From Haliotis rubra (lineage: Eukaryota): DNA of 64,000 bases. The position numbers and the translations under genes were made by a program. Positions 20 through 49,011 of the stretch are shown here, piece by piece. The notes under the pieces are model-generated. The model saw only the letters and a list, made by a program, of their open reading frames with translations. It was not told where the DNA came from and ran no database searches. The stretch lies in contig NW_025766002.1 of assembly GCF_003918875.1 (NCBI RefSeq), positions 496,001-560,000 of the forward strand, read 5' to 3'. Every line of letters starts with the position of its first letter. Positions within the stretch are counted from its first letter, which is position 1.

Positions 20-79
20 CCGAGGCTTTTTCTCCTCATCATCCAACACTTCCACCAGCTGTGTAACACTGTGGCAAGC
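20..79 (-). CDS. DDX43: DDX43-like exon 19 (gene continues beyond window start)
   Basis: tag|ACHSVTQLVEVLDDEEKKPR|gtaag. Confidence 0.9.
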
Positions 80-1251: not shown

Positions 1252-1339
1252 AGCCAGATCAAGTGTCCCGACAAAGATGTTGATGGGGCTGGACATGTAC
1301 ATGTCTGCTAGCCGCTGAACTTCTTGTGGCCAGGTGGCG
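1252..1339 (-). CDS. DDX43: DDX43-like exon 18 (motif III SAT)
   Basis: cag|SATWPQEVQRLADMYMSSPINIFVGTLDLA|gtaagt. Confidence 0.95.
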
Positions 1340-2125: not shown

Positions 2126-2278
<153 letters not shown>

Positions 2279-4005: not shown

Positions 4006-4176
<171 letters not shown>

Positions 4177-4181
4177 TCATC

Positions 4182-6163
4182 AGACCGAAATGTAACTTAC
4201 AGGAGCCGCTCCTGCAGCATTGACCGAGATGTAACTTACAGGAGCCGCTCCTGCAGCATTGACCGAGATGTAACTTACAGGAGCCTCTCCTGCAGCATTG
4301 ACCGAGATGTAACTTACAGGAGCCGCTCCTGCAGCATTGACCGAGATGTAACTTACAGGAGCTGCTCCTGCAGCATTGACCGAGATGTAACTTACAGGAG
4401 CCTGCTCCTGCAGCATTGACCGAGATGTAACTTACAGGAGCTGCTCCTGCAGCATTGACCGAGTTGTAACTTACAGGAGCTGCTCCTGCAGCATTGACCG
4501 AGATGTAACTTACAGGAGCTGCTCCTGCAGCATTGACTGAGATGTAACTTACAGGAGCTGCTCCTGCAGCATTGACCGAGATGTAACTTACAGGAGCTGC
4601 TCCTGCAGCATTGACCGAGATGTAACTTACAGGAGCTGCTCCTGCAGCATTGACCGAGATGTAACTTACAGGAGCTGCTCCTGCAGCATTGACCGAGATG
4701 TAACTTACAGGAGCTGCTCCTGCAGCATTGACCGAGATGTAACTTACAGGAGCTGCTCCTGCAGCATTGACCGAGATGTAACTTACAGGATCTCTGCAGC
4801 ATTGACCGAGATGAGCTGCTGCTCCTGCAGCATTGACCGAGATGTAACTTACAGGAGCTGCTCCTGCAGCATTGACCGAGATGTAACTTACAGGAGCTGC
4901 TCCTGCAGCATTGACGAAGATGTAACTTACAGGATGCTCCTAGCATTGACTGCCGAGATGAATGTAACTTACAGGAGCTGCTCCTGCAGCATTGACCGAG
5001 ATTGTAACTTACAGGAGCTGCTCCTGCAGCATTGACCGAGATGTAACTTACAGGAGCTGCTCCTGCAGCATTGACCGAGATGTAACTTACAGGAGCTGCT
5101 CCTGCAGCATTGACCGAGATGTAACTTACAGGAGCTGCTCCTGCAGCATTGACCGAGATGTAACTTACAGGAGCCGCTCCTGCAGCATTGCAGATGTAAC
5201 TTACAGGAGCTGCTCCTGCAGATTGAGGGCTGCTCCTGCAGCATTGACCGAGATGTAACTTACAGGAGCTGCTCCTGCAGCATTGACCGAGATGTAACTT
5301 ACAGGAGCTGCTCCTGCAGCATTGACCGAGATGTAACTTACAGGAGCTGCTCCTGCAGCATTGACCGAGATGTAACTTACAGGAGCTGCTCCTGCAGCAT
5401 TGACCGAGATGTAACTTACAGGAGCTGCTCCTGCAGGAGATGTAACTTACCTCCTGCATTGACCGAGATGTACTGCTCCTACATTGGATGCTGCTCCTGC
5501 AGCATTGACCGAGATGTAACTTACAGGAGCTGCTCCTGCAGCATTGACGAGATGTAACTTAGAGCTGCTCCTGCAGCATTGGCCTCCGAGATGTAACTTA
5601 CAGGAGCCCTCCCTGCATTGACCGAGATGTAACTTACAGGAGCCGCTCCTGCAGCATTGACTGAGATGTAACTTACAGGAGCTGCTCCTGCAGCATTGAT
5701 TGAGATGTAACTTACAGGAGCTGTTGCAGCATTGATTGAGATGTAACTTACAGGAGCTGCTCCTGCAGCATTGACCGAGATGTAACTTACAGGAGCTGCT
5801 CCTGCAGCATTGACCGAGATGTAACTTACAGGAGCTGCTCCTGCAGCATTGACCGAGATGTAACTTACAGGAGCTGCTCCTGCAGCATTGACCGAGATGT
5901 AACTTACAGGAGCTGCTCCTGCAGCATTGACCGAGATGTAACTTACAGGAGCTGCTCCTGCAGCATTGACCGAGATGTAACTTACAGGAGCCGCTCCTGC
6001 AGCATTGACGGAGATGTAACTTACAAGAGCCGCTCCTGCAGCATTGACGGAGTTGTAACTTACAGGAGCCGCTCCTGCAGCATTGATGGAGATGTAACTT
6101 ACAGGAGCCGCTCCTGCAGCATTGACCGAGATGTAACTTACAGGAGCCGCTCCTGCAGCATTG
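4182..6163. repeat. 39-bp minisatellite, ~50 copies
   Basis: Unit gaccgagatgtaacttacaggagctgctcctgcagcatt. Confidence 0.97.
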
Positions 6164-6341: not shown

Positions 6342-6452
6342 CTGCGTATGCCCCTGTAGTTGATTTTCTTCACCTCCACCTCAATCTGCTGGGCCAGTTC
6401 TCGGGTCGGAGACAACACTAACACATTGGGACCACCACGCTGCTCCCTTGGG
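6342..6452 (-). CDS. DDX43: DDX43-like exon 15 (motif Ia)
   Basis: cag|PREQRGGPNVLVLSPTRELAQQIEVEVKKINYRGIR|gtgagt. Confidence 0.95.
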
Positions 6453-7219: not shown

Positions 7220-7284
7220 ACAGGCTGGTTGTCAATGTGGATTAAAGCTGGGAGGAGAAAAGCCAAGGTTTTTCCGGTACCTGT
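7220..7284 (-). CDS. DDX43: DDX43-like exon 14 (Walker A)
   Basis: cag|TGTGKTLAFLLPALIHIDNQP|gtgagt. Confidence 0.95.
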
Positions 7285-7471: not shown

Positions 7472-7525
7472 CTGTGCTATTCCAATAAGGTCTTGTCCTT
7501 GTAACAGAATGGGCCATGCTTGTTT
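7472..7525 (-). CDS. DDX43: DDX43-like exon 13
   Basis: cag|KQAWPILLQGQDLIGIAQ|gtagg; acceptor duplicated by a SINE target-site duplication (see findings). Confidence 0.92.
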
Positions 7526-7939: not shown

Positions 7940-7995
7940 CTGTATTGGTGATGGCTCAACAAACTTCTGATTATAGATCTGTTCTAGAATCTGAG
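7940..7995 (-). CDS. DDX43: DDX43-like exon 12 (Q motif)
   Basis: cag|PQILEQIYNQKFVEPSPIQ|gtcagt. Confidence 0.92.
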
Positions 7996-8792: not shown

Positions 8793-8881
8793 GATAATGC
8801 TGGAAGGCTTCTTCAAAGGTCCTCACAGGATTTGCCACACGTTTGTCCCCGCCTTCAACAATTATGTTGTTGTTCTTCTTC
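8793..8881 (-). CDS. DDX43: DDX43-like exon 11
   Basis: cag|RKKNNNIIVEGGDKRVANPVRTFEEAFQHY|gtaag. Confidence 0.92.
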
Positions 8882-9019: not shown

Positions 9020-9870
9020 GTCAAGCCAATACAGGCAGGTCAAGCCAATACCAGTAGGCCAAGCTAATACAGATCAAGCAATTACAGGCTGGGTCAAGCT
9101 GATACAGGCAGGTCAAGCTGATACAGGTGGGTCAAGCTGATACAGGTGGGTGAAGCTGATACAGGTGGGTGAAGCTGATACAGGTGGGTCAAGCTGATAC
9201 AGGTGGGTGAAGCTGATACAGGTGGGCCAAGTTTATACAGGTGGGTGAACCACCTGTGAAGCTGATACAGGTGGGTGAAGCAGATACAGGTGGGTGAAGC
9301 TGATACAGGCAGGTCAAGCTGATACAGGTGGGCCAAGCTGATACAGGGGGTGGCTGATACAGTCAAGCTGATACAGGTGGGTCAAGCTGATACAGGTGGG
9401 TACAAGCTGATACAGGTGGGTCAAGCTGATACAGGTGGGGTGATAAGTCAAGCTGATACAGGTGGGTGAAGCTGATACAGGTGGGTCAAGCTGATACAGG
9501 TGGGTCAAGCTGATACAGGTGGGTCAAGCTGATACAGGTGGGTCAAGCTGATACAGGTGGGTCAAGCTGATACAGGTGGGTCAAGCTGATAAAGGTGGGT
9601 CAAGCTGATACAGGTGGGCCAAGCTGATACAGGTGGGTCAAGCTGATACAGGTGGGTCAAGCTGATACAGGTGGGTGAAGCTGATACAGGTGGGTCAAGC
9701 TGATACAGGCGGTCAAGCTGATACAGGTGGGTCAAGCTGATACAGATGGGTGAAGCTGATACAGGTGGGTCAAGCTGATAAAGGCAGGTCAAGCTGATAC
9801 AGGTTGCCCAAGCTGATACAGGTGGGACAAGCTGATACAGGTGGGCCAAGCTGACACAGGTGGGTCAAGC
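9020..9870. repeat. 19-bp minisatellite (degenerate copies extend to ~10330)
   Basis: Unit caagctgatacaggtgggt. Confidence 0.95.
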
Positions 9871-10613: not shown

Positions 10614-10695
10614 CTGATTTCCTTTACTTCTCCTGGATGCATGTTAGCCACATCAGGATCTTCAAAGTAAAAATTCTTCTCCAAAGGTGGCAGAC
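10614..10695 (-). CDS. DDX43: DDX43-like exon 10
   Basis: tag|GLPPLEKNFYFEDPDVANMHPGEVKEI|gtagg; LPP..KNFY motif of the DDX5/17/43 group. Confidence 0.92.
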
Positions 10696-12687: not shown

Positions 12688-12774
12688 CTTCAAATTTCTT
12701 TGCTTCATTAGCCTCTTTAGCAGCTCGAATGATTCCCCAGTTGATTTTGGGTTTCTCGGCTGGCTCTCCGTTGC
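12688..12774 (-). CDS. DDX43: DDX43-like exon 9
   Basis: cag|GNGEPAEKPKINWGIIRAAKEANEAKKFE|gtac; matches the IDW..IR segment typical of DDX43. Confidence 0.88.
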
Positions 12775-13068: not shown

Positions 13069-13137
13069 CTGCATTGTCATCTGTGCTTCCCCAGCCCGAT
13101 GATCTACCGCCACCACCTCCTCCGTAGCTTGAGGAGT
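13069..13137 (-). CDS. DDX43: DDX43-like exon 8 (Gly-rich linker)
   Basis: cag|DSSSYGGGGGGRSSGWGSTDDNA|gtgaag; 69 nt, phase 1-1. Confidence 0.78.
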
Positions 13138-13826
13138 CTGAAAATAATACAGTGTTTCAATAAGGCAGAAATAATACTAAAACATGGTTTGCTAGTTTCT
13201 TGCAATATTCCAGCTATATGGCGGAGGTCTGTAACTAATCAATCCAGTGATTAACAGCATGAGCATCGACCTACCCAACTGGGATATGATGACATGTGTC
13301 CACCAAGTCTGCAAGCCTGACAACCCATTCTGTTAGTCGCCTCTTATGACAAGCATGGATTACTGAAGACCAATTCTAACCCAGACCTCCATGAGTCTGA
13401 GAAATGGAAGGACTTTGACAGTTTTTAAATGTCAAACACAGACCATAATTTCACATATTTACACAAATATAGAAAACTGGCCCTCGGTTAATGGTCCAGT
13501 GCTATGAAATGCAGCCTTCAAACACAACACTTGTTGTTGTTTAATACTATGGTATGTCATCATCCTGATATATGATGGTCATTTGGAAGTAACAGAGTCT
13601 GGATGAGTGACAGGGTATAAAATTGCTCGCGTACTCTGGTACAGTGGTACATGTAAAATCACTTGCCCTGATAATTTTTCCACAATACCGGCCGATTATT
13701 AAAATAAACAACATAATTAACATTGGAAAGTCAACTGGACACCGGTACAGTGTGATAGACAAATTTGCTTGCCCGACAGAAAAAACACTGGACTGGGACG
13801 TCGGGCAATGAGTTATTTCCACCCCT

Positions 13827-14064
13827 GAGTGAGTGAGTGAGTGAGCAATCAGCAATATTCCAGCTATATGGCGGCGGTCTGTAAATCATCGAGTCTGGAC
13901 CAGGCAATCCAGTGAGCAACAGCATGAGCATTGTTCTGCGCAATTGGGAACCAATGACGTGTGTCAACCGAGTCAGCGAGCCTGACCACCCGATCCCGTT
14001 AGTCGCCTCTTACGACAAGCATGGGTTACTGAAGATCAATATTCTAACCCGGACCTTCACGGGT
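13827..14064 (-). mobile_element. SINE-like family B
   Basis: Near-consensus copy. Confidence 0.88.
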
Positions 14065-14251
14065 GACTCTGGATGAGACAATCCAAGGAATGACATCATG
14101 GGCATTGATCTGTTCAACTGGGATATGACATGCTTCAACAAAGTCAGCAATCTGGACGAACCGTTCCTGTCAGTTGCCTCTAACGACAAGCACTTGTTGC
14201 TGAAGACCCAAAACGTACAGACAACAAGCAGAAGATGTAGTGAAAACTTAC

Positions 14252-14363
14252 CATTAAATGATTCTGTGAGTTCCTTTATCATGTCTTCAGCTTGTGTTCG
14301 AGCCTGGTCACTGCCAGTCAGGATCACGATAACCTTCCCATCTTCTGTCTCATTTCTCGTCAC
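14252..14363 (-). CDS. DDX43: DDX43-like exon 7 (KH2 C-terminal half)
   Basis: cag|VTRNETEDGKVIVILTGSDQARTQAEDMIKELTESFN|gtaagt; 112 nt. Confidence 0.9.
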
Positions 14364-14793
14364 CTGAACATTTGACAAAACCCTGACACTGCTTTAAACA
14401 GTATTACATGTACACCATTGTATGGTGGCTTGATTTGGAAAGGAACCCTGAAGTTATTGAATGTAGGAGAAATTCACAACTGGAAAGGGGCAGTAACTCT
14501 TTCAGGTATTTTGAAATGAATTTTCTGGTTGGTGCGATGTTAACCCACTTACAGCCTAATAAATTTAAAAATAAACAAGAGTTGTTTATTGCAAAATAAA
14601 ACACTGTAGGGAGCACATCCAAGATGATAACTCACTACCCATTTAAAAACAGCTTCGACCTTTTTAAGTCATAAAGCTGTGTGTTTTGAATCTCCAGAAT
14701 TGACATCAGGATGGAACAATTATTGTGAAATAACCATATTTTGTTTGCAGTTGTTCTAAATGATTTATCTGATAGCTGCATTAAAACAATTAC

Positions 14794-14849
14794 TTTGATG
14801 CCTGCTCCACTTTCATCTTGAAGCTCTCGTATTTTGGATCCACCTTTAC
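14794..14849 (-). CDS. DDX43: DDX43-like exon 6 (KH2 GxxG loop)
   Basis: cag|GKGGSKIRELQDESGAGIK|gtaatt; 56 nt. Confidence 0.9.
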
Positions 14850-14856
14850 CTGTAAC

Positions 14857-15491
14857 ATGGACAGAGACAGGTGAGATAGTGTTTGTTGTTTTAATGACAC
14901 AGTCAGCAGAATGGACAGAGACAGGTGAGATAGTGTTTGTTGTTTTAATGACACAGTCAGCAGAATGGACAGAGACAGGTGAGATAGTGTTTGTTGTTTT
15001 AATGACACAGTCAGTAGAATGGACAGAGACAGGTGAGATAGTGTTTGTTGTTTTAATGACACAGTCAGCAGAATGGACAGAAACAGGGGAGATAGTATTT
15101 GTTGTTTTAATGACACAGTCAGCAGAATGGACAGAGACAGGTGAGATAGTGTTTGTTGTTTTAATGAATGGACACAGTCACAGAATGGACAGAAACAGGG
15201 GAGATAGTAGAACCGTCAGCAGAATGGACAGAGACAGGTGAGATAGTGTTTGTTGTTTTAATGACACAGTCAGCAGAATGGACAGAGACAGGTGAGATAT
15301 GTTTTAATGACAGAGTCAGCAGAATGGACAGAAACAGGGGAGATAGTGTTTGTTGTTTTAATGACACAGTCAGCAGAATGGACAGAGACAGGTGAGATAG
15401 TGTTTGTTGTTTTAATGACACCGTCAGCAGAATGGACAGAGACAGGGGAGAAAGTTGTTTAAATGACACAGTCAGCAGAATGGACAGAAAC
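14857..15491. repeat. 54-bp minisatellite abutting the exon 6 acceptor
   Basis: Unit atggacagagacaggtgagatagtgtttgttgttttaatgacacagtcagcaga. Confidence 0.95.
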
Positions 15492-15540
15492 AATTAAGAT
15501 CATGTTTGTGGCCGAATGTATTTCAGCTGCAGGTTAATTA

Positions 15541-16980
15541 ATGGAATATTCAAGTACTGTAATGGCAGCCTACAAAGAACCAACTCTGGAATATTCCAGT
15601 ACTGTAATGGCAGTCTACAAAGAACCAACTCTGGAATATTCCAGTACTGTAATGGCAGCCTACAAATAACCAACTCTGGAATATTCCAGTACTGTAATGG
15701 CAGCCTACAAATAACCAACTCTGGAATATTCCAGTACTGTAATGGCAGTCTACAAAGAACCAACTCTGGAATATTCCAGTACTGTAATGGCAGCCTACAA
15801 AGAACCAACTCTGGAATATTCCAGTACTGTAATGGCAGGCTGGCAGTACAAAGAACCTACAAAGAACCAACTCTGGAATATTCCAGTAGTGGCACTCTAC
15901 AAAGAACCAACTCTGGCAGCCTACAAAGAACCAACTCTGAATATTCCAGTACTGTAATGGCAGCCTACAAATAACCAACTCTGGAATATTCCAGTACTGT
16001 AGTACTGTGGCAGCCTACAAAGCCAAAGACCAACTCTGGAATATTCCAACCAACTCTGGAATATTCCAGTACTGTAATGGCAGTCTACAAAGAACCAACT
16101 CTGGAATATTCCAGTACTGTAATGGCAGCCTACAAAGAACCAACTCTGACAACTCTGGTAACTCTGGAATATTCCAGTACTGTAATGGCAGTCTACAAAG
16201 AAACCAACTCTGGAATATTCCAGTACTGTAATGGCAGCCTACAAAGAACCAACTCTGGAATATTCCAGTACTAATGGAACCAACTCATATTCCAGTATTG
16301 TAATGGCAGCCTACAAAGAACCAACTCTGGAATATTCCAGTACTGTAATGGCAGCCTACAAAGAACCAACTCTGGAATATTCCAGTACTGTAATGGCAGC
16401 CTACAAAGAACCAACTCTACTGTAGCTCTACAAAGTACAGAACCAACTCTGGAATATTCCAGTACTGTAATGGCAGCCTACAAAGAACCAACTGGAATAT
16501 TCAGTACTGTAATGGCAGCCTACAAAGCAACTCTGGAATATTCCAGTACTACAAATGGCAGCTGGAATATTCTACAAATAACCAACTCTGGAATATTCCA
16601 GTACTGTAATGGCAGCCTACAAAGAACCAACTCTGGAATATTCCAGTACTGTAATGGCAGCCTACAAAGAACCAACTCTGGAATATTCCAGTACTGTAAT
16701 GGCAGCCTACAAAGAACCAACTCTGGAATATTCCAGTACTGTAATGGCAGTCTACAAAGAACCAACTCTGGAATATTCCAGTACTGTAATGGCAGCCTAC
16801 AAATAACCAACTCTGGAATATTCCAGTACTGTAATGGCAGCCTACAAATAACCAACTCTGGAATAGTCCAGTACTGTAATGGCAGTCTACAAAGAACCAA
16901 CTCTGGAATACTCCAGTACTGTAATGGCAGCCTACAAAAAAACAACTCTGGAATATTCCAGTACTGCGATGGCAGCCAAA
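15541..16980. repeat. 45-bp minisatellite, ~30 copies
   Basis: Unit ctggaatattccagtactgtaatggcagcctacaaagaaccaact. Confidence 0.95.
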
Positions 16981-17465
16981 CCAGTGATTGCTGTAATGAA
17001 TGTATGCGTTGGTATCAATGCTGCTGTAGCCCAAAGTGATGAAGGTCTAATATGTTTAACCCTTAGGTAAAACACAAAAGCATGGGTACGGTATCAGTAT
17101 CTGGCAAGCAAACGAAATGCAAAGTGAATTCCAACGAATTTGATGACCGGGGCATTTCATAATCATTGACCCCTGTGCTTGAGGTACAAAACATCAGCCA
17201 TGTCACTAAACTATGACAACCTGTACCGTGAAATTGCCTCATATTGGGGTTAAGTGGACCTGTGAATCAGAATTCCTTGTGGCTTGCTCCTACCACAAGT
17301 ATGAAGTGGAGGCAGCCTAATTCAGACCAGGAATTCACTGTTGTAGTTAGTGAACGAGTTTATCTGTTCCAGTTAAATGATCTTTTGTTTCAAATACCAT
17401 AGCAGAAAAACATGATTTCTAAACAGTGACGACATATATGAAACTTGTTTTGAACAAAACCGTAC

Positions 17466-17546
17466 CAATAATTCTTCCTACACAGCTCTGGTCCACATAC
17501 ATTTCTGTCTTTTCTGAGCTTGAGCCCCACACCTTGTCTCCATTTT
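17466..17546 (-). CDS. DDX43: DDX43-like exon 5 (start of KH2)
   Basis: cag|ENGDKVWGSSSEKTEMYVDQSCVGRII|gtacgg; 81 nt. Confidence 0.88.
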
Positions 17547-17753
17547 CTGGAATAACAGCATTTATAGTTCAAAAGTATTTGCACAAAGTGAAGACTAAGA
17601 ATGGAGAAGCTATATTCAAAGGACAATAGCCGAGAATGTTTTCCATTATTTTCTCTTAGTCAGCTGAAACTTGGTCTCAAACATTCAGATAATCTTGTCA
17701 TTCATTGAAATTATACTTATCTAAAAATTATTTTGAGTCAATTGAATGAAACA

Positions 17754-19055
17754 CAGTACAACCAGAAATTATTGAGAATTTAAAGATTGTAAATGTTTTT
17801 ATTTTTTTCCCTCATTACTCACGTATTAAATGTGAATATTAGCAGAACATAACTCCAGATTCAAAGACAGGTGAACAGTTAGTACTTTGTCAAGTCACCA
17901 TGGGCAGCAATGCAGGCTTCAATACGGCGGGGCATACTACTGATCAAAGAAGTTAGAAAGTCGTGATCCACGCTGTCCCAATATCGGACCACCTCTTCTT
18001 CATTTCAGCAATATTTGTGAGATTTTTCTTATTGACACTTTCCTTCATAAGTCCCCAAACATTTTCTATTGGATTTAGGTCAGGGCTATAGCTTGGCCAA
18101 TCTAATAATGTCATATTTTGGGTCCGAAACCAGGCCTGTGAATGCTTTGAACGATGTTTTGGGTCGTTGCCCTGCTGGAAAATCCAAACATTTCCATAGA
18201 ACACGTGAGAAGATGGAAGTAAATGTCCCTCGAGAATATTTGTGTACCGCTCACTGCTCATATACCCTTCAAATACACAGAGGGGCGTTGCCCCTAACAC
18301 AGATATGCCACCCCTCACGTTAAATTTCGGACTGTACTTTGGGCGCTGATACAAAGGTTTTTCAGTTTGTTTGGTCCAGAATTTCAGTGTATTAGGAAAC
18401 AGACACACACAGAACTTTCATCTGAGAAAATCACATTGTCCGAAAGTTAAAATTTCTATGCTGTAAGCACCAGTTCAACCTTCGCTCCTTTTGTTCAGGT
18501 TTCATGATCGGTGATGGAATTCCGAGACTTTTCAGCCAACCCATTGCATGCAGCTCAGTTCTAATTGTCTCCTTACAGACAGCCACAGTTCCCCTATCAA
18601 TCATATTCAGCCTTAAGTTTTCTTAACTCCTTTGTTTGTTTTTAGAAACAAGAATACCAAGCCGCCTCCTGTCACCGACAGTCAATTTTCTGGGCCTACC
18701 TGCGCCTCCCTGGTGCTCAATGCCATATCCATTTGCAATATTTTTCAAAACACGATAAACAGTGGACAAAGGGATGCCTGTTCTACTTGAAATCACTTTA
18801 GCTGATCTGATGTCCTTGTTATAATACTCTAAAATCAACTTCCTCTTCTCTAAATCATCCATACTGAGGATCACTGAAAATGTCCTCTGCTAGCAAGTAA
18901 ACAAAGGGGGATAACTCTTCACAAACTAATGAAAAGGATTAACGGAGTTGTCTCTCTTGAATGAAACCAAGCACTTGATAGCTGGTCAAGGTTGTTTATA
19001 CTAGAAATCCAATTAAACATATTCCTAAAATTCTCAATAATTTCTGGTCATACTA
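17754..19055 (-). mobile_element. Tc1/mariner (DD34E) transposon relic in DDX43 intron 4
   Basis: ~28-bp TIRs cagtacaaccagaaattattgagaattt (3 mismatches); broken transposase with HTH, GRPRK, FSDE, QQGNDPKH (catalytic D->G) and SPDLNPIE, 34-residue spacing. Confidence 0.9.
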
Positions 19056-19135
19056 TACCTTCATATGGAATGTCTGAGATGACCTGTATGACAATGAGAA
19101 AATATACAAAACATCAACTTCCGGAGTCAACTGAC

Positions 19136-19216
19136 CTGCCGAAGACCCCCAACTGTCCTCGCTGCGCCCCCTGCCTGAGCGTCCTCTGCCCCCTCGGTTG
19201 TTGCCAGCAGACAAAC
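19136..19216 (-). CDS. DDX43: DDX43-like exon 4 (RG-rich linker)
   Basis: cag|GLSAGNNRGGRGRSGRGRSEDSWGSSA|gtcagt; 81 nt, phase 1-1. Confidence 0.8.
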
Positions 19217-19907
19217 CTGTGGAATATGTGGACTGTCTGTTGCTTAAAGCCATTGTTAGACATCTGCCACTTTGCTGATACCTATGATCAGGGATATGGC
19301 GATGACAAATCAAATCAAATCAAATTGTGAACTTTGCATATATATCCAAGATCATAGATTCTGGGCATGCCTTGGGGATGTAACTCTACTGTATACTACT
19401 GGCAGGATAAGTTGAGCACCAACCTGACAATTGACCCGTATTGGCATGTATGAGTCTCGCCCACTGATGCTTACCATTGTTAGCGAAGGGGACCCAGGTT
19501 GTGCGCGATCAAGTGTAGTGCAACTTGCTACACTGACGTGAGAGTCTTATGAGCTGAGCAAGGCATGTGAAGCTACGCGCTGAATCAAGTTCATCATCAT
19601 GCAATGCACGTGCACTAGCCTACATCTGCTCTACCTTTCATAAACCAATTAGGTTTGCTCATTGCCGTGCAACGTCTACTTCTCGTAAACGCGTTCTCTG
19701 CGCCGGTCCAACTTATCCTTGTTTGCCAGTAATGACCTGTTCTGACTTGGAATGCCCACAGGGTCAGTTAATCATGTCCACAGGCATTCTAAAAAGCCTA
19801 CAGCATGTACAGCATCCCAGCCACAATAAATGCCTTGCTTCACATTCCAGTTGTCAACTGTGGTGAAAGGTAAACCTACAAACCCACAAAACAGTATCGT
19901 CTCTTAC

Positions 19908-20019
19908 CATTAAATGATTCTGTGAGTTCCTTGATCATGTCCTCTGCCTGTGTGCGAGCTTCATCACTGCCAGTTAGGACGACAAGTACCTGCCCATCTT
20001 CAGTCACATTTCTGTTCAC
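19908..20019 (-). CDS. DDX43: DDX43-like exon 3 (KH1 C-terminal half)
   Basis: cag|VNRNVTEDGQVLVVLTGSDEARTQAEDMIKELTESFN|gtaag; 112 nt. Confidence 0.9.
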
Positions 20020-20423
20020 CTGAGTTCAACAAAATTAAGGCTGCTACATACCTACACAAGACTTTTTGTGTGTGGTATGCATAACCACTTTTCAGTATGC
20101 TGTTGTAATTTCTTTCATTTATGGATAAACCTCAACAACAAAACCTACAAAACATCCCACATGGCTTTAGGGTAGCCTCGTGGTTAAAGTGTTTGCTTGT
20201 TACGCCCAGACTCGATTCCCCACATGGGTAAAATGCGTGAAGCCCATTTCTTGTGTCACCCGCTGCGATGTTGCTGGATATATTGCTAAAATCAGTGTAA
20301 AACTAAGCTCACTCACACACTAACATTCCACAAGTCCTGGCAGCATTTTTCTCCACATTAGTGTCTCATTGGAAGTAGAAAATCTACATATTTTATTGTC
20401 TGTCTATACTATCAGCCCAAAGA

Positions 20424-20593
20424 CTGACTGACTGACTGAGTTGGGTTTTACGCCGCTTTTAGCAATATTCCAGCTACATCCTGGCGGGGGACACCAGAAA
20501 TGGGCTTCACACATTGTACCCATGTGGGGATTCGAACCCGGGTCTTCGGCGTGACGAGCCAACACTCTAACCACTAGACTACCCCACCGCCCC
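20424..20593 (-). mobile_element. SINE family A
   Basis: Full copy; TSD tcagcccaaaga. Confidence 0.9.
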
Positions 20594-20784
20594 TCAGCCC
20601 AAAGAACGTTGAACTGTTTACAAGTTACTAATCATTGTCTGTTTTAAATTAGGGTTCTATTATGTATTTGGTACACGAATGATCCTTAGTATACAATAAC
20701 TACAAGTCATATAAACATAAATAAGAGGTGGATAAACACAGTTTACAGCTAATAAGATATCAAACACATCTGAGACTCCTGTAC

Positions 20785-20840
20785 CTTGATGTTTGCTCCA
20801 CTTGAATCTTGCAACTCTCGTATTTTCGATCCACCTCTCC
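20785..20840 (-). CDS. DDX43: DDX43-like exon 2 (KH1 GxxG loop)
   Basis: aag|GRGGSKIRELQDSSGANIK|gtac; 56 nt. Confidence 0.9.
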
Positions 20841-22082
20841 CTTGGATAATGAATAAATAGGATAAATGTTGAAAATGAACATGTACATCCTATTTTTGTT
20901 AAAGGCAAATAGAGTCTGAATCTGACACTTCATATTTCAATGACCAAATAGAGGCAGACCAAAACTTTGAAATAAGCAAGTTTGTTAGTTGTATAACGCC
21001 GCACTCAGCAATATTCCAGCTATATGACGGCGGTCTTTATATAATCAAGTCTGGACCAGACAGTCCAGTGATCAACTGCATGAGCATTGAGCCTACGCAA
21101 CTGGGATATGATGACACTTGCTGAAGGTAAATTCTAATCCTGATCATCAATAATATTTTTTGTTCAGAATAGAAGACATGTACAATGTAAATAAAGATGT
21201 CTAATGACTGGATACATATGAGTTTTCTGGGGGTTTTTATACATAAATACATCATTTACTCACACACCCATACTATAGTAATAAAGAAATAAATTCATTC
21301 ACATTGTCAATAATGTTTACTCTTGAAAAAGATTTCATATGGTTTTTATTTGTGATCCACAATAATATAATAAATATACAAGTAAAGGTGTCACAGACCA
21401 CAGACATGGGCGATCCAGGAATTTTGAAAGGGGGTCGAATCCCTGAACCCCACATTGGCTCCGCCAATGACAGACAGAATAGCATTTTGCTTGTTTTTGC
21501 TTCATAAGTTGTATGGTTGTGGGTGGGGGTGTTGTACACTGATTATGCCTGGGATGTGGGTATGGTACACTGAATTCATGGACATCAGGTTAAAGCATGG
21601 TGACTCTTTCATTGCATAATCATTCTTGACAATATTATCTTATGAATCTATCACGACAAACCTGTGCTGTTAGTACATTTTGTGTCAAACCAGTTAATTT
21701 ATAGAGTAGGAAAACATTAAGGTAACACACGTACAAGCATATCAAAACAAATGTAGGCGATATTGGTCATTTGGGAACCATAATAGTAAATTTAGCGATT
21801 CGGAAAGAGTTCCTTCCATTCCCCAACACTAAACCTAACTCTAAACCTAACCCTAAACCTAACTTAAATTTTGGACTTTTAGTCATTTTTGTGAGTTCTC
21901 TAGTAATTGTTCTGATAAGTTTTGTTAATAATTTTAGTATACATTAATTTATAAATATTATTTGGGATGGGGGAACGGGAGGAACACTTACCTGTTTATT
22001 TTTCTGTTATTAACAGGCCTAATTATTTGAGGGTATATATCTGTGTGCAAAACATTAGCAGGATAGAAAAGCACTCTCTTAC

Positions 22083-22284
22083 CAATGATTCTTCCAACGC
22101 AACTTTCCTCCACATACATTTTAGTTGTTTCATTCTCGAAGCTTGACTCTTGTTGCTCAGAATTCTGAGAACGCCAGTTGGAAGAATCTGACCTGTCCTT
22201 GTCATCAAACCCGCCGTCCCGTCTGAACCCCCCTCCCCCTCCCCGCCTTCCCCATCCTCTTCTACCCCGTTGACCAAACTCCAT
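22083..22284 (-). CDS. DDX43: DDX43-like helicase exon 1 (RGG-rich N-terminus, start of KH1)
   Basis: ATG at 22284; MEFGQRGRRGWGRRGGGGGF...MYVEESCVGRII; G|gtaag donor; 202 nt, phase 1. Confidence 0.85.
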
Positions 22285-24183
22285 TTTCCCGCTATGTATG
22301 AAAAGAGGCAAGATTTTCACGTGGTTTCAATCTGTCAAATTTCGTTTGAAACAAGTCGTGATCTAATATGTGATATAGTTATACGTTCTGGTACACCATG
22401 TTCATCATATTATAAAACGTATGCAGCGGCATGAGAAATAACAGTTATTATTTATAAGATACCGAAACTGAAAGTTCCACTCCATCTCTTCTACATGCCC
22501 GCAAGGAATATAGTGAGCTCCATGCACAGTTTCAGTGAGGTGAGTTTGAAGGTGTGTCTTCGATTAGAGCAACCTACCATGCTTACAAGCTTCGTGCTAA
22601 CTAAAAACCCTACCGTTTACATAATGGAGAATAATATGTTTCATTAAAAATACAGCTACCATAGGCGGGTTTATGTTAGTCTGTCTCACAGTCCCTGAAC
22701 CACATTATTTCCCCTACTGCCAAGCCCTCCTTGCAATGTTAAAGCCCTTAATGAAGCAAGTCTAGATTTCCCCGGGTTCAGGGAACCAGCTCACTGGGGC
22801 TCCTTTTCAATTAAAATGTGTGTTTTTTGTTACCATCAAAATTATTCAAGGACTAAGCGTTAATCTATGTTTATTTCAGTTCATGTGGCACCATGTTATA
22901 TAACAGAGTTGCTCTTGTGGGATTATGAATTCACGGAAAAGTTTAATCAGAGACCATATATATACCGATATGGTATATGGTCTCTGGTTTATGAACATAT
23001 TTTCAGTCTATATCTTTTTGTTGCAATGGGATTGTGGTTGGTTTTTATTTGCTTGTTTTTTTGTTGTTTTTGTTGTATATTTTTATCAAAATAACCTTCA
23101 GGTTGGGTCGGGGTGCGTTAAACATTGTAATATCCCTATGATATAACAACCCTAAAGAGGTGGCCACACTTGGTCTCTGCATAAACCTGTGTTTTCACAG
23201 ATTTGGGAGATTTAGAATCCGGGAATATCTAGACTTGCTCTCTTTATATTTATAATATTGCGTTTAGGGTTCTGTGAATGTTCAGGGACAGGGGACAGAC
23301 TATGGCAATGTAACTTAACCATGTTCTTAATACACCCGTTGATATCAGCTTTCATTGTTTAGGACAACTTACGATAAGTTTTGAGAATTTTCGAATTGCT
23401 CTGAAACTGTTAGAAGTGTGCTAGTAGACGGGACATGCGCCTGCATATACTTCGGGTCGATTCAACGAATGGGTGTAATGTATGTAGTCTTGTAGGGTGT
23501 ATTTAGGACTGGTCGGTGTTATCATTATTGTCACAGGAAATCATTTTCAAATGATTTTATGACACTAAGTTAAACATTGCGTCATGTTTTAAAATTGATT
23601 CTGTTCTACAGGATGCTTATTTAATTTCAGTTGGGCATTCACAACCCCGTTAAAGGTGGATTTTCCACTGATTAAGTTAAAGCTTTCAATCTCCCAAACA
23701 CCTTCAGTTAATTCTTCATGCTGCTAGCTGCATTAAACGGGTTTTTTTAATTTAAATATGTTTTCTACTAAACTGACGTGCAGTATGCGACATCCCATGG
23801 AGTCACGGAGACATTGAACATTACATGATGTCAACTACGGATATACCGAACTCAAAAGGCGCCACTAATTCTATTTCGTTATAACCGCAGTTCTCTATAC
23901 ACATTACGACTGTCAGACATCTTTTATCAAATCATGTTACCGCGCCATGTGAATAAAAAGAATTAGGAAAGTTTGCATTGAACTAAGCTTATACTTCTCA
24001 CACACGAGTAATGTACATTATGAATGGATCATTGAGACTGTTTCGTTGACATACATGTGTCGAACGTCACTACCTAAAGCGTTCTACTTACGATGTGCGT
24101 TTGCAATCAGAACTATTCCATCAATGATATCCTACATTCCAGTCGTCGCTATTATAGATCGAATATGTCCACCTCAGATGCTA

Positions 24184-45726: not shown

Positions 45727-45809
45727 TTAATACTGCGGATTTGGGCATTCACGGGCGAAATGGCCATCTGCACCGCACTGGAAGCAAGCATTGTTGCGAT
45801 GACGTTGGG
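45727..45809 (-). CDS. RGG-KH-CCHC protein exon 4 (zinc knuckle, stop)
   Basis: tttcag|PQRHRNNACFQCGADGHFARECPNPQY*; CX2CX4HX4C; phase matches exon 3; total 537 nt (178 aa). Confidence 0.87.
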
Positions 45810-46140
45810 CTGAAAATAAAAGAAGTTAAATGTTAACTGAAACACAAGATTTCACAGGAATAATTCAGACTAAATGAGGCATGATGTGTGGAGACATGCA
45901 ATTGTCATTTCTTGTAGTATTCGTTAAAATACAGAATTGGCCTAATCAGCATAAATATAGTATGATCTATTGATTTACAGTACGCAGATTTGGTGCAGTT
46001 TAGATTCCTGAACTGACATTCATTAGCAAATTTCTGCATTAACCCAGCAAACGTGGATTAATACTCCCATACAAAAAATGTTACAAAATTATGCAACATA
46101 TCTTAATAACTCAAGAAAAAGATTATGAAATTTTACTCAC

Positions 46141-46261
46141 GACCGCTCCTGTCCTGTGGCTCTTCCAGTTCCCTGATCAATGCTTCTGCTGCTTGTCTGT
46201 GCTGACTCTCTCCAGACAACTGGATTCGAACTCTTCCACCTTCTGCCTGGTCACTGAATAC
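46141..46261 (-). CDS. RGG-KH-CCHC protein exon 3
   Basis: aag|VFSDQAEGGRVRIQLSGESQHRQAAEALIRELEEPQDRSG|gtgagt; 121 nt. Confidence 0.88.
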
Positions 46262-46769
46262 CTTAAAATGATGTTAGGACATAATCAGAAACAAGTTTCC
46301 TTTGAACATTTCATTACAATTACTCCATATAGTACTGTTTACACTCATTACATCAATCACCCAAACTGAAAAGTCAAAAGTCACTTGGATGACTAATCAT
46401 ATAGCTAAAGCCAGCATTTGTTTAATTCAACTGCACACTTTAGATCAGTGATGGAAGTATATAAAAAGCAGTCGTTTAAAATTTTCATTTTGGATGTGTC
46501 CCACCAACAAGTGAAACAAATCAATTTACTCTAGTTCAGCTTTCTATCAATTTATTAACATTAAAAACATTTAAAATAATATTCTGAATAGAAATTACTT
46601 TAAGATTTAAAAACACTTTGACGAAAACATTACTCATGTAAATACTATGAATTATTAAGGGGATTCCATTTTTTGTTGTGCCAGTCATGTGCTATTAATG
46701 TATAACACATGGCATACCTCATAGTGGTATCCCAAAAAAGCCCTCCAAAATTCCTGTAGTTCAACATAC

Positions 46770-46825
46770 TTTAATCAAAGCTCCACTTTGGTCCTGCAGC
46801 TCACGAATTCTCTGACCCCTTTTCC
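46770..46825 (-). CDS. RGG-KH-CCHC protein exon 2 (KH GxxG loop)
   Basis: cag|GKRGQRIRELQDQSGALIK|gtatgt; 56 nt, same size and phases as DDX43 exons 2 and 6. Confidence 0.9.
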
Positions 46826-48734
46826 CTGCAAAGGTAACAGACATATTTACATCATGAAAGTAAATCTGTAACAATATCAAGTGTTCATGTTTGTCGTCAT
46901 TTGACCTACATCATTTGATAGGGATTACCATTACCGGTTATTCCATTACATACATAAACAATTATCTTGGTATCCATAATGAAAGTAAACAAGACCTTAA
47001 AGGGCCAGTATATCAACCCTTCTGAACTACTGAGAGTAAATAAGAGATAACCCTCAACTTGACTCTGCTGTGGCTTGCTTAAGGTTAGGTGTGTAAATTC
47101 TACTTCCAGGAACCCATGTACAATTTTTATATATTAAGATTCAGGTTTTGAGGAGAAAATGTCATGTGTGCATGCATGCAAAAGTACAGAACATGATCAG
47201 GGATTGGGAAAGGCAGGGGACCTGGGCCATTAGAATAAAAAAATGGCCCATTAAAATTTTGAAGTTTACTATTGACACAAGGGCAGTGACCCTTTCAAAA
47301 TTCAGAAAATGGCTAATAATCCTGAAACTGGACCATTGTCAAAGTTCTCTCTCCCGATCCCTGCATGATCAATATTCTTCACACAACCCTCCCTCAATGA
47401 AGTGCTCACTTTAAGTGCGCTACTCATAAAATTGTCTGATTTAAAAACACCCGCAACTACCACTGGCCCTTTAAAGCTTCTTGGGCTGGGACCGTACAGG
47501 CCGGGAGCTGTCCCCTCTGATATTATCACAATACTTCCATGTGCTATTTGGTGACTAGCATTTTTTTCAATAGATACGATGACCAAATGCCTGTATACTG
47601 TGTAACCACTTGGCCAGTCTGTTCGCCTTAAGCTAAAAGGGAGACAACTATACCAACATTAAAAACACATGGAATGGGGTGACTGCCAGTGTTAATTATG
47701 GCACAATGAGATGAAAATATTTCACTTCTAATTGGGCTCTTTGGGGGTCACTGGTGGATACTGTATATTGTCCCAGCCCTAAGAGCACAAAGTAAAATGT
47801 CTAATACTTTCAAACCTGTTTACAAGAGAAATAAGACATTAAAGAAATTTATATTCCAACATTTTGAATACACCATCCATGTACCTGAGCTTTTACTCCA
47901 AACAGATTCATAGAGTGCAAGATTTGTTTTCTTAATTATAAAACACTGATCAATGTCAAGGAGTGAGAAATGTAACAAAAAAGTAAGCCTTTTTACTTAC
48001 TTTATAATGACACATTTTACATTAAGAGACACTCTCCTCCCCACCCCCCTGATGGTATGACGGCCAATTAGAGCCAATTTGGTACTGTTAAATATATGGC
48101 ATCCAAAGAAGAGACTGCAAAAGACATGAAAAGAATATTCAAATTCGGCTGGGGAGAATTCAAGTGCATTTAAAAAAAATCTGGTGTAATTAACAAACAT
48201 AATTAAATTGAATCGCCAGAGGAAATTACTCAGGAAACAATGTGGTGTTTAAGTCGCAATTATATATGGAACGACGAGCAAACATTAATATTCAAATAAT
48301 CAGAATCCAAATTATGGTATATGGTAAGAATATGATTCATGTAAAATGAAAACTGAACGAGAAATTCTGGACTCACTTTACTTACCGGCACCAGGACAAT
48401 CACTGACAAAGCACATGGCCCACGAACACATGGTCATGATTTGGCTCGCACAGCATCCTCAAAGCGAGGCAAAGGCGTTCAGAAACATACACGACCACAA
48501 AACAAACCAAAATCTGTCGGACAATCTGATTCCACACAATTTTCACAACAGTTTGATAGCAAATCTCGAGCTCTGGGGCATTCTCAGTCGCTAGGTAGCT
48601 TTATCGAGCTATGTAACAATGGCCGCCAAAATCTGACCGACATGTTCCCAAAGAAGCGCACATGTTATGCCGAGAACATCCTGAAACTCAAGACAAAAAA
48701 CACCCACAAATGAACAATAATGTAGCATGCTAAC

Positions 48735-49011
48735 CGATTATTCTGCCGACAATTGACTGGTCAACGTAAATGTCTGTTTTTCCACCGGGGTTGTTCCAGT
48801 TCGAATGATATGAACCACCATCATTGCCTCGGCCGCCATCACGGCCTCCGCCATAATTATCACGTCCTCCGCCATAACCTCCATCTCGTCCACTGCCATA
48901 ACTGCTTCCCCCAACTCTTCCTCCGCCATAACTATCATGTCCGCCGAAACCATCATTTCCGCCAAATCCACCACCCCTTCGCCTGTCTGATCGCTCGTAC
49001 CCTCTCTGCAT
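48735..49011 (-). CDS. RGG-KH-CCHC small RNA-binding protein exon 1
   Basis: MQRGYERSDRRRGGGFGG...KTDIYVDQSIVGRII G|gttag; 277 nt, phase 1. Confidence 0.85.

What the first reader, a model, noticed from the sequence alone, without database searches (positions are those of the whole stretch)
13069..22284. DDX43 with two tandem KH domains from an internal exon-block duplication
Seen: exons 1(3' end)-2-3-4 and 5-6-7-8 are parallel modules. Exons 2/6 are both 56 nt and exons 3/7 both 112 nt, with near-identical proteins (RTQAEDMIKELTESFN is identical) and many synonymous differences, suggesting both are under purifying selection. Both GxxG loops are intact (GRGG, GKGG). Established: vertebrate DDX43/DDX53 have a single KH. 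Inference: the phases allow in-frame switching between one and two KH domains, either exon 1->6 (skipping 330 nt) or exon 4->9 (skipping 318 nt), which could tune RNA avidity.
Basis: partly seen in the sequence, partly recalled or inferred. Interest (0 to 1): 0.7.

Follow-up and report, generated by a model that had tools for sequence, protein, structure and literature searches.

The report
Abalone DDX43 with two KH domains
This abalone RNA-helicase gene (DDX43) really does carry two copies of its RNA-binding KH domain, made by an old duplication of a four-exon block, but the gene is already in RefSeq and extra KH copies in DDX43 are common and have arisen repeatedly in molluscs and other invertebrates.

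Summary
On the minus strand, 19 exons with canonical splice sites and consistent phases encode 568 residues. Their in-frame peptides (18 checked in full, the 19th by an 8-residue match) agree exactly and in order with Haliotis rubra XP_046566679.1 (785 aa, misnamed "DBP2-like").

Pfam finds two KH_1 domains plus DEAD and Helicase_C. AlphaFold predicts two confident KH type I folds joined by a disordered Gly/Arg-rich linker.

The two modules differ by dS 0.81 with dN/dS 0.15. Each is 94% identical to its H. asinina counterpart, so both are kept by selection. Transcript contigs from a close relative join exons 1–5.

The novelty is smaller than claimed:
- **Congeners:** H. asinina has 2 KH, H. 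cracherodii 3 and H. rufescens up to 4.
- **Wider survey:** 26 of 120 DDX43 clusters carry several KH domains.
- **Origin:** a KH-domain tree and an AU test (p = 0.002) indicate independent, lineage-specific duplications. The abalone one predates the four sampled Haliotis species.

In-frame switching is possible by phase, and RefSeq predicts it in H. rufescens and Mytilus. It is not shown for this species.

An earlier scan note on the neighbouring KH-knuckle gene of this same window agrees with these results.

The parts
22083..22284 (-). E1: start codon, RGG-rich N-terminus and first strand of KH-A (tail 22134-22083)
   Evidence: equals P0155 residues 1-67; covered by transcript contigs of X1 and X2
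20785..20840 (-). E2, 56 nt: GRGG loop and helices of KH-A
   Evidence: 56 record letters between the E3 and E1 pieces, and the bin depth fits the exon length
19908..20019 (-). E3, 112 nt: C-terminal half of KH-A
   Evidence: laid piece 19906-20017 in X1 and X2 contigs
19136..19216 (-). E4, 81 nt: Gly/Arg-rich linker after KH-A (phase 1 to 1)
   Evidence: same contig covers position 19172; pLDDT below 50
17466..17546 (-). E5, 81 nt: linker plus first strand of KH-B; its tail is homologous to the E1 tail
   Evidence: E5 against E1 local alignment, none of 2000 shuffles reached the score; covered by the same contigs
14794..14849 (-). E6, 56 nt: GKGG loop and helices of KH-B
   Evidence: 82% nt identity to E2
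14252..14363 (-). E7, 112 nt: C-terminal half of KH-B
   Evidence: 83% nt identity to E3
13069..13137 (-). E8, 69 nt: Gly-rich linker after KH-B (phase 1 to 1)
12688..12774 (-). E9: start of the spacer between the KH array and the helicase
10614..10695 (-). E10: spacer
8793..8881 (-). E11: spacer leading to the Q-motif region
7940..7995 (-). E12
7472..7525 (-). E13
7220..7284 (-). E14: motif I (TGTGKT)
6342..6452 (-). E15: DEAD domain
   Evidence: Pfam DEAD 3.5e-6 on the exon piece
4012..4153 (-). E16: DEAD domain
   Evidence: Pfam DEAD 1.8e-5
2127..2227 (-). E17: motif II (DEAD box)
   Evidence: Pfam DEAD 4.1e-6
1252..1339 (-). E18: motif III (SAT) region
20..79 (-). E19, 60 nt: last exon inside the window; the gene continues beyond base 1
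   Evidence: an 8-residue piece matches P0155 from residue 550, and my reading of the printed sequence gives residues 549-568
46160..48780 (-). Related feature: third, more diverged KH copy with the same three-exon layout, in the upstream neighbour gene (KH-coding pieces 48780-48736, 46823-46770, 46261-46160)

Best explanation
The window holds the first 19 exons of the single-copy DDX43 gene of blacklip abalone (Haliotis rubra, or a genome identical to it at this locus). The protein is a DEAD-box RNA helicase whose N-terminal region carries two complete KH type I domains instead of one.

Each KH domain is encoded by the same three-exon core: first strand, then a 56-nt exon with the GXXG loop, then a 112-nt exon. 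A linker exon follows each core.

The second module arose by tandem duplication of this four-exon block in the abalone stem lineage. That was after the split from the lineage of Gigantopelta and before the four sampled Haliotis species diverged. Californian species later added one or two more B-type modules.

Both modules are kept by purifying selection and are spliced into the mRNA.

Inferred, not shown: the two KH domains act as independent beads on a disordered Arg/Gly-rich tether. Each holds a short stretch of single-stranded, probably pyrimidine-rich, RNA. Together they raise the affinity and lengthen the footprint with which the helicase core is loaded onto its substrate. The setting is likely germline RNA or piRNA metabolism, as for DDX43 in silkworm and mouse.
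For: Gene model: 19 exons, all AG/GT, with consistent phases. The E1-E18 peptides match P0155 (XP_046566679.1) exactly and consecutively.

Domains: Pfam finds KH_1 in 2 stretches (3.3e-29), DEAD (5.4e-49) and Helicase_C (3.9e-31). AlphaFold2 gives two strand-helix-helix-strand-strand-helix units at pLDDT above 90, a linker below 50 and pTM 0.41. Foldseek matches single KH domains with target-normalised TM-scores of 0.8-0.9, and its top hits are tandem-KH structures.

Selection: dS 0.81 and dN/dS 0.15 between the modules, Fisher p = 1e-7. KH-A and KH-B are each 94.4% identical between H. rubra and H. asinina, against 85-87% for the flanking low-complexity parts.

Age: introns show no residual similarity. 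In the KH tree all 11 Haliotis domains form one clade (94/97), sister to Gigantopelta, and the B types group across species, with the rubra and asinina pair at 99/90. The AU test rejects grouping Haliotis KH1 with the KH1 of other gastropods (p = 0.0018).

Single locus: only these eight exons match in the 1.38-Gb assembly.

RNA: contigs of 2124 and 839 nt in runs X1 and X2 lie on E1 and E3, with 56 record letters between them after correcting for the exon ends (the length of E2). They also cover E4 and E5. Unique intron bins have zero depth, and the depth in each bin equals exon length times contig depth.

Function by analogy: human DDX43 KH binds pyrimidine-rich single strands through its GXXG loop and sets specificity and processivity (PMC7949032). 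Bombyx DDX43 KH also stimulates the ATPase and acts in piRNA amplification (PMC8025031). Clustering of KH domains raises affinity (PMC11261784).
Against: Splicing of E6-E8 was not seen directly.

The RNA contigs come from 'organism A', which differs from the window by about 3-4%. It is a close relative or a divergent haplotype, not certainly the same species.

The KH tree has only 73 columns, and within-lineage clustering could also come from concerted evolution.

The group tested by the AU test was named after the tree had been seen.

The avidity mechanism and the piRNA link are analogy only. Nothing here measures binding. Counting from the human numbering in PMC7949032, the alanine three residues before the first GXXG glycine, which is critical in human DDX43, is an arginine in both abalone modules.
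Confidence: 0.75

Rival explanations
1. Splice-adjustable KH dosage. The modules would be cassette units, and abalone would make both 1-KH and 2-KH DDX43 by joining E1 to E6, E3 to E8 or E4 to E9, tuning RNA avidity by tissue or stage. This is compatible with the best explanation as an added layer.
For: All the junctions concerned are phase 1, and the skipped blocks are 330 or 318 nt. RefSeq lists H. rufescens isoforms with 4, 3 and 1 KH, M. californianus with 2 and 1, and M. galloprovincialis with 4 and 2. The H. rufescens isoform alignment shows clean whole-module deletions at exon borders.
Against: Only one H. rubra protein, with both KH domains, is in the cluster. The same is true of H. 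asinina. The X1 and X2 contigs carry module A together with E5, and no skipping joint was listed, although contigs drop rare forms and the joints table was swamped by repeats. In H. rufescens the skipped modules 2 and 3 are almost identical, so some predicted isoforms could be read-mapping artefacts. Isoform X7 is an N-terminal truncation, not a skip.
Confidence: 0.25
2. The double KH is ancient, ancestral to gastropods or to molluscs. Gene conversion within each lineage would then make the copies look like lineage-specific duplicates, and single-KH species would be secondary losses.
For: At least two KH domains occur in 10 of 11 gastropod and 7 of 15 bivalve species sampled, and in an annelid. 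Within-lineage clustering of repeats is what concerted evolution produces. H. rufescens KH1 and KH2 share derived residues.
Against: A and B have stayed distinct, with orthologous pairs across four Haliotis species, and differ by dS 0.81. So there has been no homogenisation since before the genus radiated. The AU test rejects a common KH1 clade (p = 0.0018). Linker lengths and architectures differ between lineages; Littorina, for example, has zinc knuckles between its two KH domains. Gigantopelta, a chiton, oysters, Solemya and Lingula have one KH.
Confidence: 0.1
3. One module is a decaying or non-functional duplicate (pseudo-exons), or the duplication is an assembly artefact.
For: None beyond the general possibility. 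E6-E8 were not seen directly in RNA.
Against: Frames, splice sites and GXXG loops are intact. dN/dS is 0.15. Cross-species identity is 94% for both modules. Both folds are predicted with confidence. Module A and E5 are in transcripts. The modules differ at 17-27% of nucleotides and lie 5.5 kb apart, with different repeats in their introns. DNA contigs of X6 cover the region. The layout is the same in H. asinina.
Confidence: 0.03

Closest known systems
Human DDX43 (HAGE) and Bombyx mori DDX43
   Same: An N-terminal KH type I domain with a GRGG-type loop sits in front of a DEAD-box core. The closest named relatives of the window's product are DDX43/DDX53. RGG-rich tails are present.
   Different: The characterised proteins have one KH domain, and this layout is described as conserved between silkworm and human (PMC8025031). 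Abalone has two, separated by a disordered Arg/Gly-rich tether of about 40 residues. Counting from the numbering given in PMC7949032, the alanine critical in human DDX43 is an arginine here.
RefSeq DDX43 models of other Haliotis species: H. asinina XP_067678893.1, H. cracherodii XP_071118185.1, H. rufescens XP_046368450.2 and its isoforms
   Same: Same gene, same module types (A with its own linker, B with its own linker), and orthologous A and B modules.
   Different: Copy number differs: 2 in H. rubra and H. asinina, 3 in H. cracherodii, 4 in H. rufescens X1/X2. Only H. rufescens has predicted isoforms that skip a module.
Tandem-KH RNA and DNA binders: FBP KH3-KH4 (1j4w), IMP1 KH34 (3krm), Nova-1 KH1/2 (2anr), PCBP2 KH1-2 (2jzx)
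   Same: Two KH type I folds in series. These structures are the top Foldseek hits and align over both domains. Cooperative binding by clustered KH domains is the accepted way to raise affinity and specificity (PMC7949032, PMC11261784).
   Different: The predicted relative orientation is not fixed (rmsd about 15 A over both domains, pTM 0.41, linker pLDDT below 50). So it does not look like the rigid back-to-back IMP1 KH34 unit. From my own recollection of that structure, it is nearer to the flexible Gly-rich linker of FBP KH3-KH4. Here the array feeds a helicase.
The neighbouring KH plus zinc-knuckle gene in this window (about 45.7-49.0 kb)
   Same: It has the same three-exon KH layout and orientation. 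Its KH is closest to the Haliotis DDX43 modules (58% to B).
   Different: It is a separate small gene without a helicase. Its loop reads GKRG, and it is much more diverged (about 42% in the third exon).

Membership tests
DDX43/DDX53 subfamily of DEAD-box helicases | DEAD-box helicase core (DEAD and Helicase_C domains; motifs I, II and III) | tested here: met
   P0155: PF00270 5.4e-49 and PF00271 3.9e-31. Exon pieces E15-E17 hit PF00270 on their own. TGTGKT, DEAD and SAT are readable in E14, E17 and across the E17/E18 junction.
DDX43/DDX53 subfamily of DEAD-box helicases | KH domain in the N-terminal region, upstream of the core | tested here: met
   PF00013 in 2 stretches, 3.3e-29; the domains lie at P0155 residues 56-119 and 166-229.
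DDX43/DDX53 subfamily of DEAD-box helicases | Closest relatives are proteins named DDX43/DDX53, not DDX5/DBP2 | tested here: met
   The profile search returned 120 best hits. Nearly all the named ones are DDX43 or DDX53, including Haliotis rufescens and H. asinina DDX43. The RefSeq name 'DBP2-like' for the H. rubra protein is a misnomer.
DDX43/DDX53 subfamily of DEAD-box helicases | A single KH domain, as in the characterised human and silkworm proteins | tested here: not met
   There are two KH domains. This is a variant architecture and not a reason to exclude it from the family: 26 of 120 DDX43 clusters have more than one KH.
DDX43/DDX53 subfamily of DEAD-box helicases | ATP-dependent unwinding, pyrimidine-rich single-strand preference, role in germline or piRNA pathways | not testable with these tools
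   Known only for human, mouse and Bombyx (PMC7949032, PMC8025031, PMC10294715).
KH type I domain | Strand-helix-helix-strand-strand-helix topology | tested here: met
   Model elements E14-20 H21-28 H30-42 E45-52 E57-63 H66-85, repeated at E124-130 ... H176-196, with pLDDT above 90.
KH type I domain | GXXG loop between the first two helices | tested here: met
   GRGG (P0155 68-71) and GKGG (178-181), each formed across the exon junction.
KH type I domain | Structural match to solved KH domains | tested here: met
   Nova-2 KH3 (1dtj; TM 0.91 by target, rmsd 0.9 A), PCBP1 KH1, hnRNP K KH3 and FUBP1.
Rigid tandem-KH di-domain (IMP1 KH34 type) | Short linker and a fixed inter-domain interface | tested here: not met
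   Prediction only: residues 87-122 of the model have pLDDT below 50, pTM is 0.41, and rmsd is about 15 A when both domains are aligned to di-domain structures.

The most novel reading that the evidence does not exclude
The number of KH modules in DDX43 is a recurrently evolving dosage of RNA-binding domains. The same exon block has been amplified independently in abalones (2-4), mussels (2-4), scallops, venerid clams, an alvinellid worm (3), a spider (5), crustaceans, a tunicate and possibly notothenioid fish (5). It has also spawned helicase-free KH genes, and it can be trimmed again by in-frame module skipping. If the copy number tracks the demands of germline piRNA and transposon control, this would be a natural series for testing how KH avidity sets helicase substrate choice.
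Probability: 0.2. Interest if true: 0.6.

Novelty: new variant of a known kind. Interest (0 to 1): 0.4.

Why it matters
DDX43 is described in the literature as the one DEAD-box helicase that pairs a single KH domain with the helicase core. That KH domain is known to set substrate specificity, processivity and ATPase activity.

The abalone gene, and the survey it prompted, show that this layout is not fixed. KH modules have been duplicated in tandem many times in invertebrates, and the copies have been kept under selection.

This gives a ready-made natural series of 1 to 5 KH domains, with predicted isoforms that differ in number. Such a series could be used to test how the valency of RNA-binding domains tunes a helicase. 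It also corrects a misnamed RefSeq entry.

It is a modest evolutionary and annotation result, not a new kind of system.

Tried and rejected
1. Pfam on single exon pieces. The KH exons are too short: the best hit was 15 bits against a cut-off of 27.

2. Exhaustive search with a 37-aa profile of E3 and E7. It gave only 7 hits and no DDX43, though it did uncover helicase-free KH arrays.

3. Word searches with the KH regions of P0003 and P0027. They reached only spider DDX43.

4. A first mixed alignment of spider DDX43 with all the exon pieces was scrambled by MAFFT. I tested row sets locally and used the cleaner A3.

5. The idea that E5 is a chimera of the head of E9 and the tail of E1, which would place the duplication breakpoints inside exons. 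The E1-tail half holds: none of 2000 shuffles reached the score. The E9-head half does not (p = 0.63), and only a four-residue motif remains.

6. Residual intron homology between the modules: none (all p above 0.05). E4 against E8 at the nucleotide level is not significant either (p = 0.42). Their protein similarity is seen only by eye in the H. rufescens linkers.

7. A paralogue or an assembly duplicate: only one locus exists in the genome.

8. The joints table from the read laying was filled with SINE and transposon joints. Splice evidence was therefore taken from the contig pieces, the variant table and the depth arithmetic.

9. The possibility that the neighbour gene's KH is the orthologue of the first KH of caenogastropod DDX43. 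This is rejected by identity: 39% against 58% to Haliotis KH-B.

The spliced model was never typed or joined for a search. Exons were searched one by one by reference. The stored RefSeq protein P0155, which equals the conceptual product, was used wherever a whole protein was needed.

Full report
**What is in the sequence**

The finding lies on the minus strand. I extracted the eight proposed exons and checked their splice sites, phases and translations. All have AG acceptors and GT donors and open frames. The reading frame is carried correctly from exon to exon.

E2 and E6 are both 56 nt, and E3 and E7 are both 112 nt. E4 and E5 are 81 nt each and E8 is 69 nt. Module A is the tail of E1 plus E2 and E3, followed by linker exon E4. 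Module B is the tail of E5 plus E6 and E7, followed by linker exon E8. The GXXG loops read GRGG and GKGG, and each glycine-first codon is split across the exon junction.

The last 17 residues of E3 and E7 are identical.

Downstream I defined eleven more exons of a DEAD-box core, using a spider DDX43 as a guide. The gene continues beyond base 1.

**Is the similarity more than chance, and are both copies constrained?**

Over 72 aligned codons the modules differ at 43 nucleotides, giving 73-83% identity per exon. About 23 of the differences are synonymous and 19 are not. That gives dS 0.81, dN 0.12 and dN/dS 0.15. The excess of synonymous change has p = 1e-7.

Introns flanking the paired exons keep no detectable similarity. 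The duplication is therefore old, and both copies have been under purifying selection since it happened.

**Identity of the gene**

The spliced model could not be searched as one string, so I worked exon by exon and by reference. Pfam on single pieces recognised only the helicase exons.

The exhaustive search with a 37-residue profile was too weak. Two word searches reached only spider DDX43.

I then made an alignment of four spider DDX43 proteins plus the window's exon peptides, each as a separate row (A3). This retrieved 120 DDX43/DDX53 clusters with names.

The in-frame peptides of E1-E18 occur exactly and consecutively in XP_046566679.1 of Haliotis rubra. This protein is 785 aa, RefSeq calls it "DBP2-like", and it is stored here as P0155. 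An 8-residue piece of E19 matches at the next expected position. From that point P0155 served as the reference for the joined product.

Pfam on P0155 gives KH_1 in two stretches, DEAD and Helicase_C. A six-frame search of the whole 1.38-Gb assembly finds only this one locus.

**Fold**

AlphaFold2 on residues 40-262, with 110 aligned KH regions, predicts two strand-helix-helix-strand-strand-helix units at pLDDT above 90. A linker of about 36 residues has pLDDT below 50, and pTM is 0.41.

Foldseek matches single KH type I domains at rmsd 1-2 A. Its best overall hits are tandem-KH structures, but those align with a poor global fit. The picture is two independent KH beads on a disordered Arg/Gly-rich tether, not a rigid di-domain.

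**RNA evidence**

No run is on record as RNA. When laid on 17400-22300, however, runs X1 and X2 behave as RNA:
- Bins of unique intron have zero depth.
- Single contigs of 2124 and 839 nt lie on E3 and E1.
- After correcting for the exon ends, 56 record letters lie between those two pieces, which is the length of E2.
- The same contigs cover E4 and E5.
- The depth in each bin equals the exon bases in the bin times the contig depth.

So E1-E2-E3-E4-E5 are joined in one RNA in two samples.

There are two limits. First, the organism differs from the window by about 3-4%, so it is a close relative or a divergent haplotype. The cap is one call of at most 6 kb, and I avoided the long tandem arrays in the E5-E6 intron.

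**How unusual is it?**

A KH profile built locally, and checked with Pfam, gives these counts.

| Group | KH domains per DDX43 |
|---|---|
| H. rubra, H. asinina | 2 |
| H. cracherodii | 3 |
| H. rufescens | 4 (X1, X2), 3 (X3-X6), 1 (X7, an N-terminal truncation) |
| Pomacea, Littorina, Babylonia, Elysia, Plakobranchus | 2 |
| Bradybaena | 2-3 |
| Gigantopelta | 1, plus zinc knuckles |
| Mytilus galloprovincialis | 4 or 2, by isoform |
| M. californianus | 2 or 1, by isoform |
| Scallops, venerid clams | 2 |
| Oysters, Pinctada, Mya, Mactra, Solemya, Sinanodonta, a chiton, Lingula | 1 |
| Paralvinella (annelid) | 3 |
| Oedothorax (spider) | 5 |
| Artemia | 3 |
| Daphnia, a tick, Styela | 2 |
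| Trematomus (low-quality fish model) | 5 |

Overall, 26 of the 120 clusters have more than one KH domain.

**When did the abalone duplication happen?**

I built a maximum-likelihood tree of 62 KH domains. All 11 Haliotis domains fall in one clade (94/97), next to Gigantopelta. The B-type domains group across species, and the extra Californian modules are of B type. The A-type domains form species pairs at the base of the clade.

Mytilus, scallops, Paralvinella and Styela each form their own clades of repeats.

An AU test rejects joining Haliotis KH1 with the KH1 of other gastropods (p = 0.0018). The caveat is that I named this group after seeing the tree.

KH-A and KH-B are each 94.4% identical between H. 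rubra and H. asinina. That is more than the linkers (85-87%) and a little less than the helicase core (98%).

The simplest reading is a duplication in the abalone stem lineage, followed by further B-type gains in the Californian species. Many similar events happened independently elsewhere. Concerted evolution of an older pair cannot be fully excluded, but it fits poorly with A and B having stayed distinct throughout the genus.

**Switching between one and two KH domains**

The phases allow it. E1-E6, E3-E8 and E4-E9 joins are all in frame, with 330 or 318 nt skipped.

RefSeq predicts whole-module deletions in H. rufescens and Mytilus. In H. rufescens, however, the skipped modules are near-identical copies, which invites mapping artefacts.

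For H. rubra there is one annotated protein, and it has both domains. I saw no skipping junction.

**Mechanism**

Shown here: two intact, conserved and transcribed KH type I domains sit in front of a DEAD-box core, separated by a disordered RG-rich tether.

Inferred from the literature:
- In human DDX43, the KH domain binds pyrimidine-rich single strands through its GXXG loop. It sets substrate specificity and processivity (PMC7949032).
- In Bombyx, the KH domain also boosts the ATPase, and the protein releases cleaved RNA from Ago3 during piRNA amplification (PMC8025031).
- Single KH domains bind with micromolar affinity, and clustering raises both affinity and specificity (PMC11261784).

Two tethered KH domains should therefore lengthen the RNA footprint and strengthen loading of the helicase.

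**Literature**

Three full-text searches found no paper that describes DDX43 with several KH domains. The functional papers treat one KH plus the core as the conserved layout.

**Verdict**

But the gene is already in RefSeq, its congeners have up to four modules, and multi-KH DDX43 is frequent in invertebrates. Interest is moderate. It lies mainly in the recurrent amplification of this module, not in this one gene.

Noticed in passing
window 45727-49011 (KH-coding pieces 48780-48736, 46823-46770, 46261-46160, minus strand): A third copy of the same three-exon KH module sits in a separate small gene upstream of DDX43. Its loop reads GKRG. It is 58% identical to Haliotis KH-B but only about 39% identical to the first KH of caenogastropod DDX43, so it is a local derivative of the DDX43 module.
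   Followed up: partly
window 14857-15507 and 15542-16977 (intron E5-E6); 4183-6163 (intron E15-E16); 9083-9870 (intron E10-E11): The introns of this gene hold large minisatellite arrays. The units are 54 nt (about 12 copies), 45 nt (about 32 copies), 39 nt (51 copies) and 19 nt (42 copies).
   Followed up: partly
window about 17730-19200 (intron E4-E5) and about 20350-20680, 20850-21170 (introns around E2): There is a fragment that by eye looks like a Tc1/mariner-type transposon, and there are SINE copies. Summed contig depths in run X6 reach 10^5 to 10^6, so these are very high-copy repeats. They swamped the joints table of the read laying.
   Followed up: no
P0155 (XP_046566679.1, Haliotis rubra): RefSeq names this protein 'ATP-dependent RNA helicase DBP2-like'. 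Its domain layout and closest relatives are DDX43, so the name is misleading.
   Followed up: yes
P0050 and P0156 (Haliotis asinina XP_067678893.1 and XP_067662887.1): Two H. asinina DDX43 proteins differ at 1 of 791 residues, yet they are recorded on contigs of different length (67 and 102 Mb). This is either a very recent whole-gene duplicate or a redundancy in the assembly.
   Followed up: no
P0055 (Trematomus bernacchii, 'LOW QUALITY PROTEIN') and P0005 (Chaenocephalus aceratus, partial): DDX43 models from notothenioid fish show five KH domains, and a fragment shows repeated KH halves. So the statement that vertebrate DDX43 has a single KH may have exceptions, or these may be assembly artefacts.
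   Followed up: no
P0003, P0006, P0011 (Logan/JGI contigs, organism unknown): These are helicase-free proteins made of 3, 2 and 6 DDX43-like KH domains with Gly-rich linkers. P0003 has a family of close relatives of 285-450 aa.
   Followed up: partly
P0078 (Littorina saxatilis), P0135 (Gigantopelta aegis), P0056 (Mizuhopecten), P0142 (Porites): [quoted passage not shown] Littorina has KH, two knuckles, KH, then the helicase. Gigantopelta has KH, three knuckles, then the helicase. This recalls the separate KH-knuckle gene next to abalone DDX43 and may point to gene fission, fusion or merged gene models.
   Followed up: no
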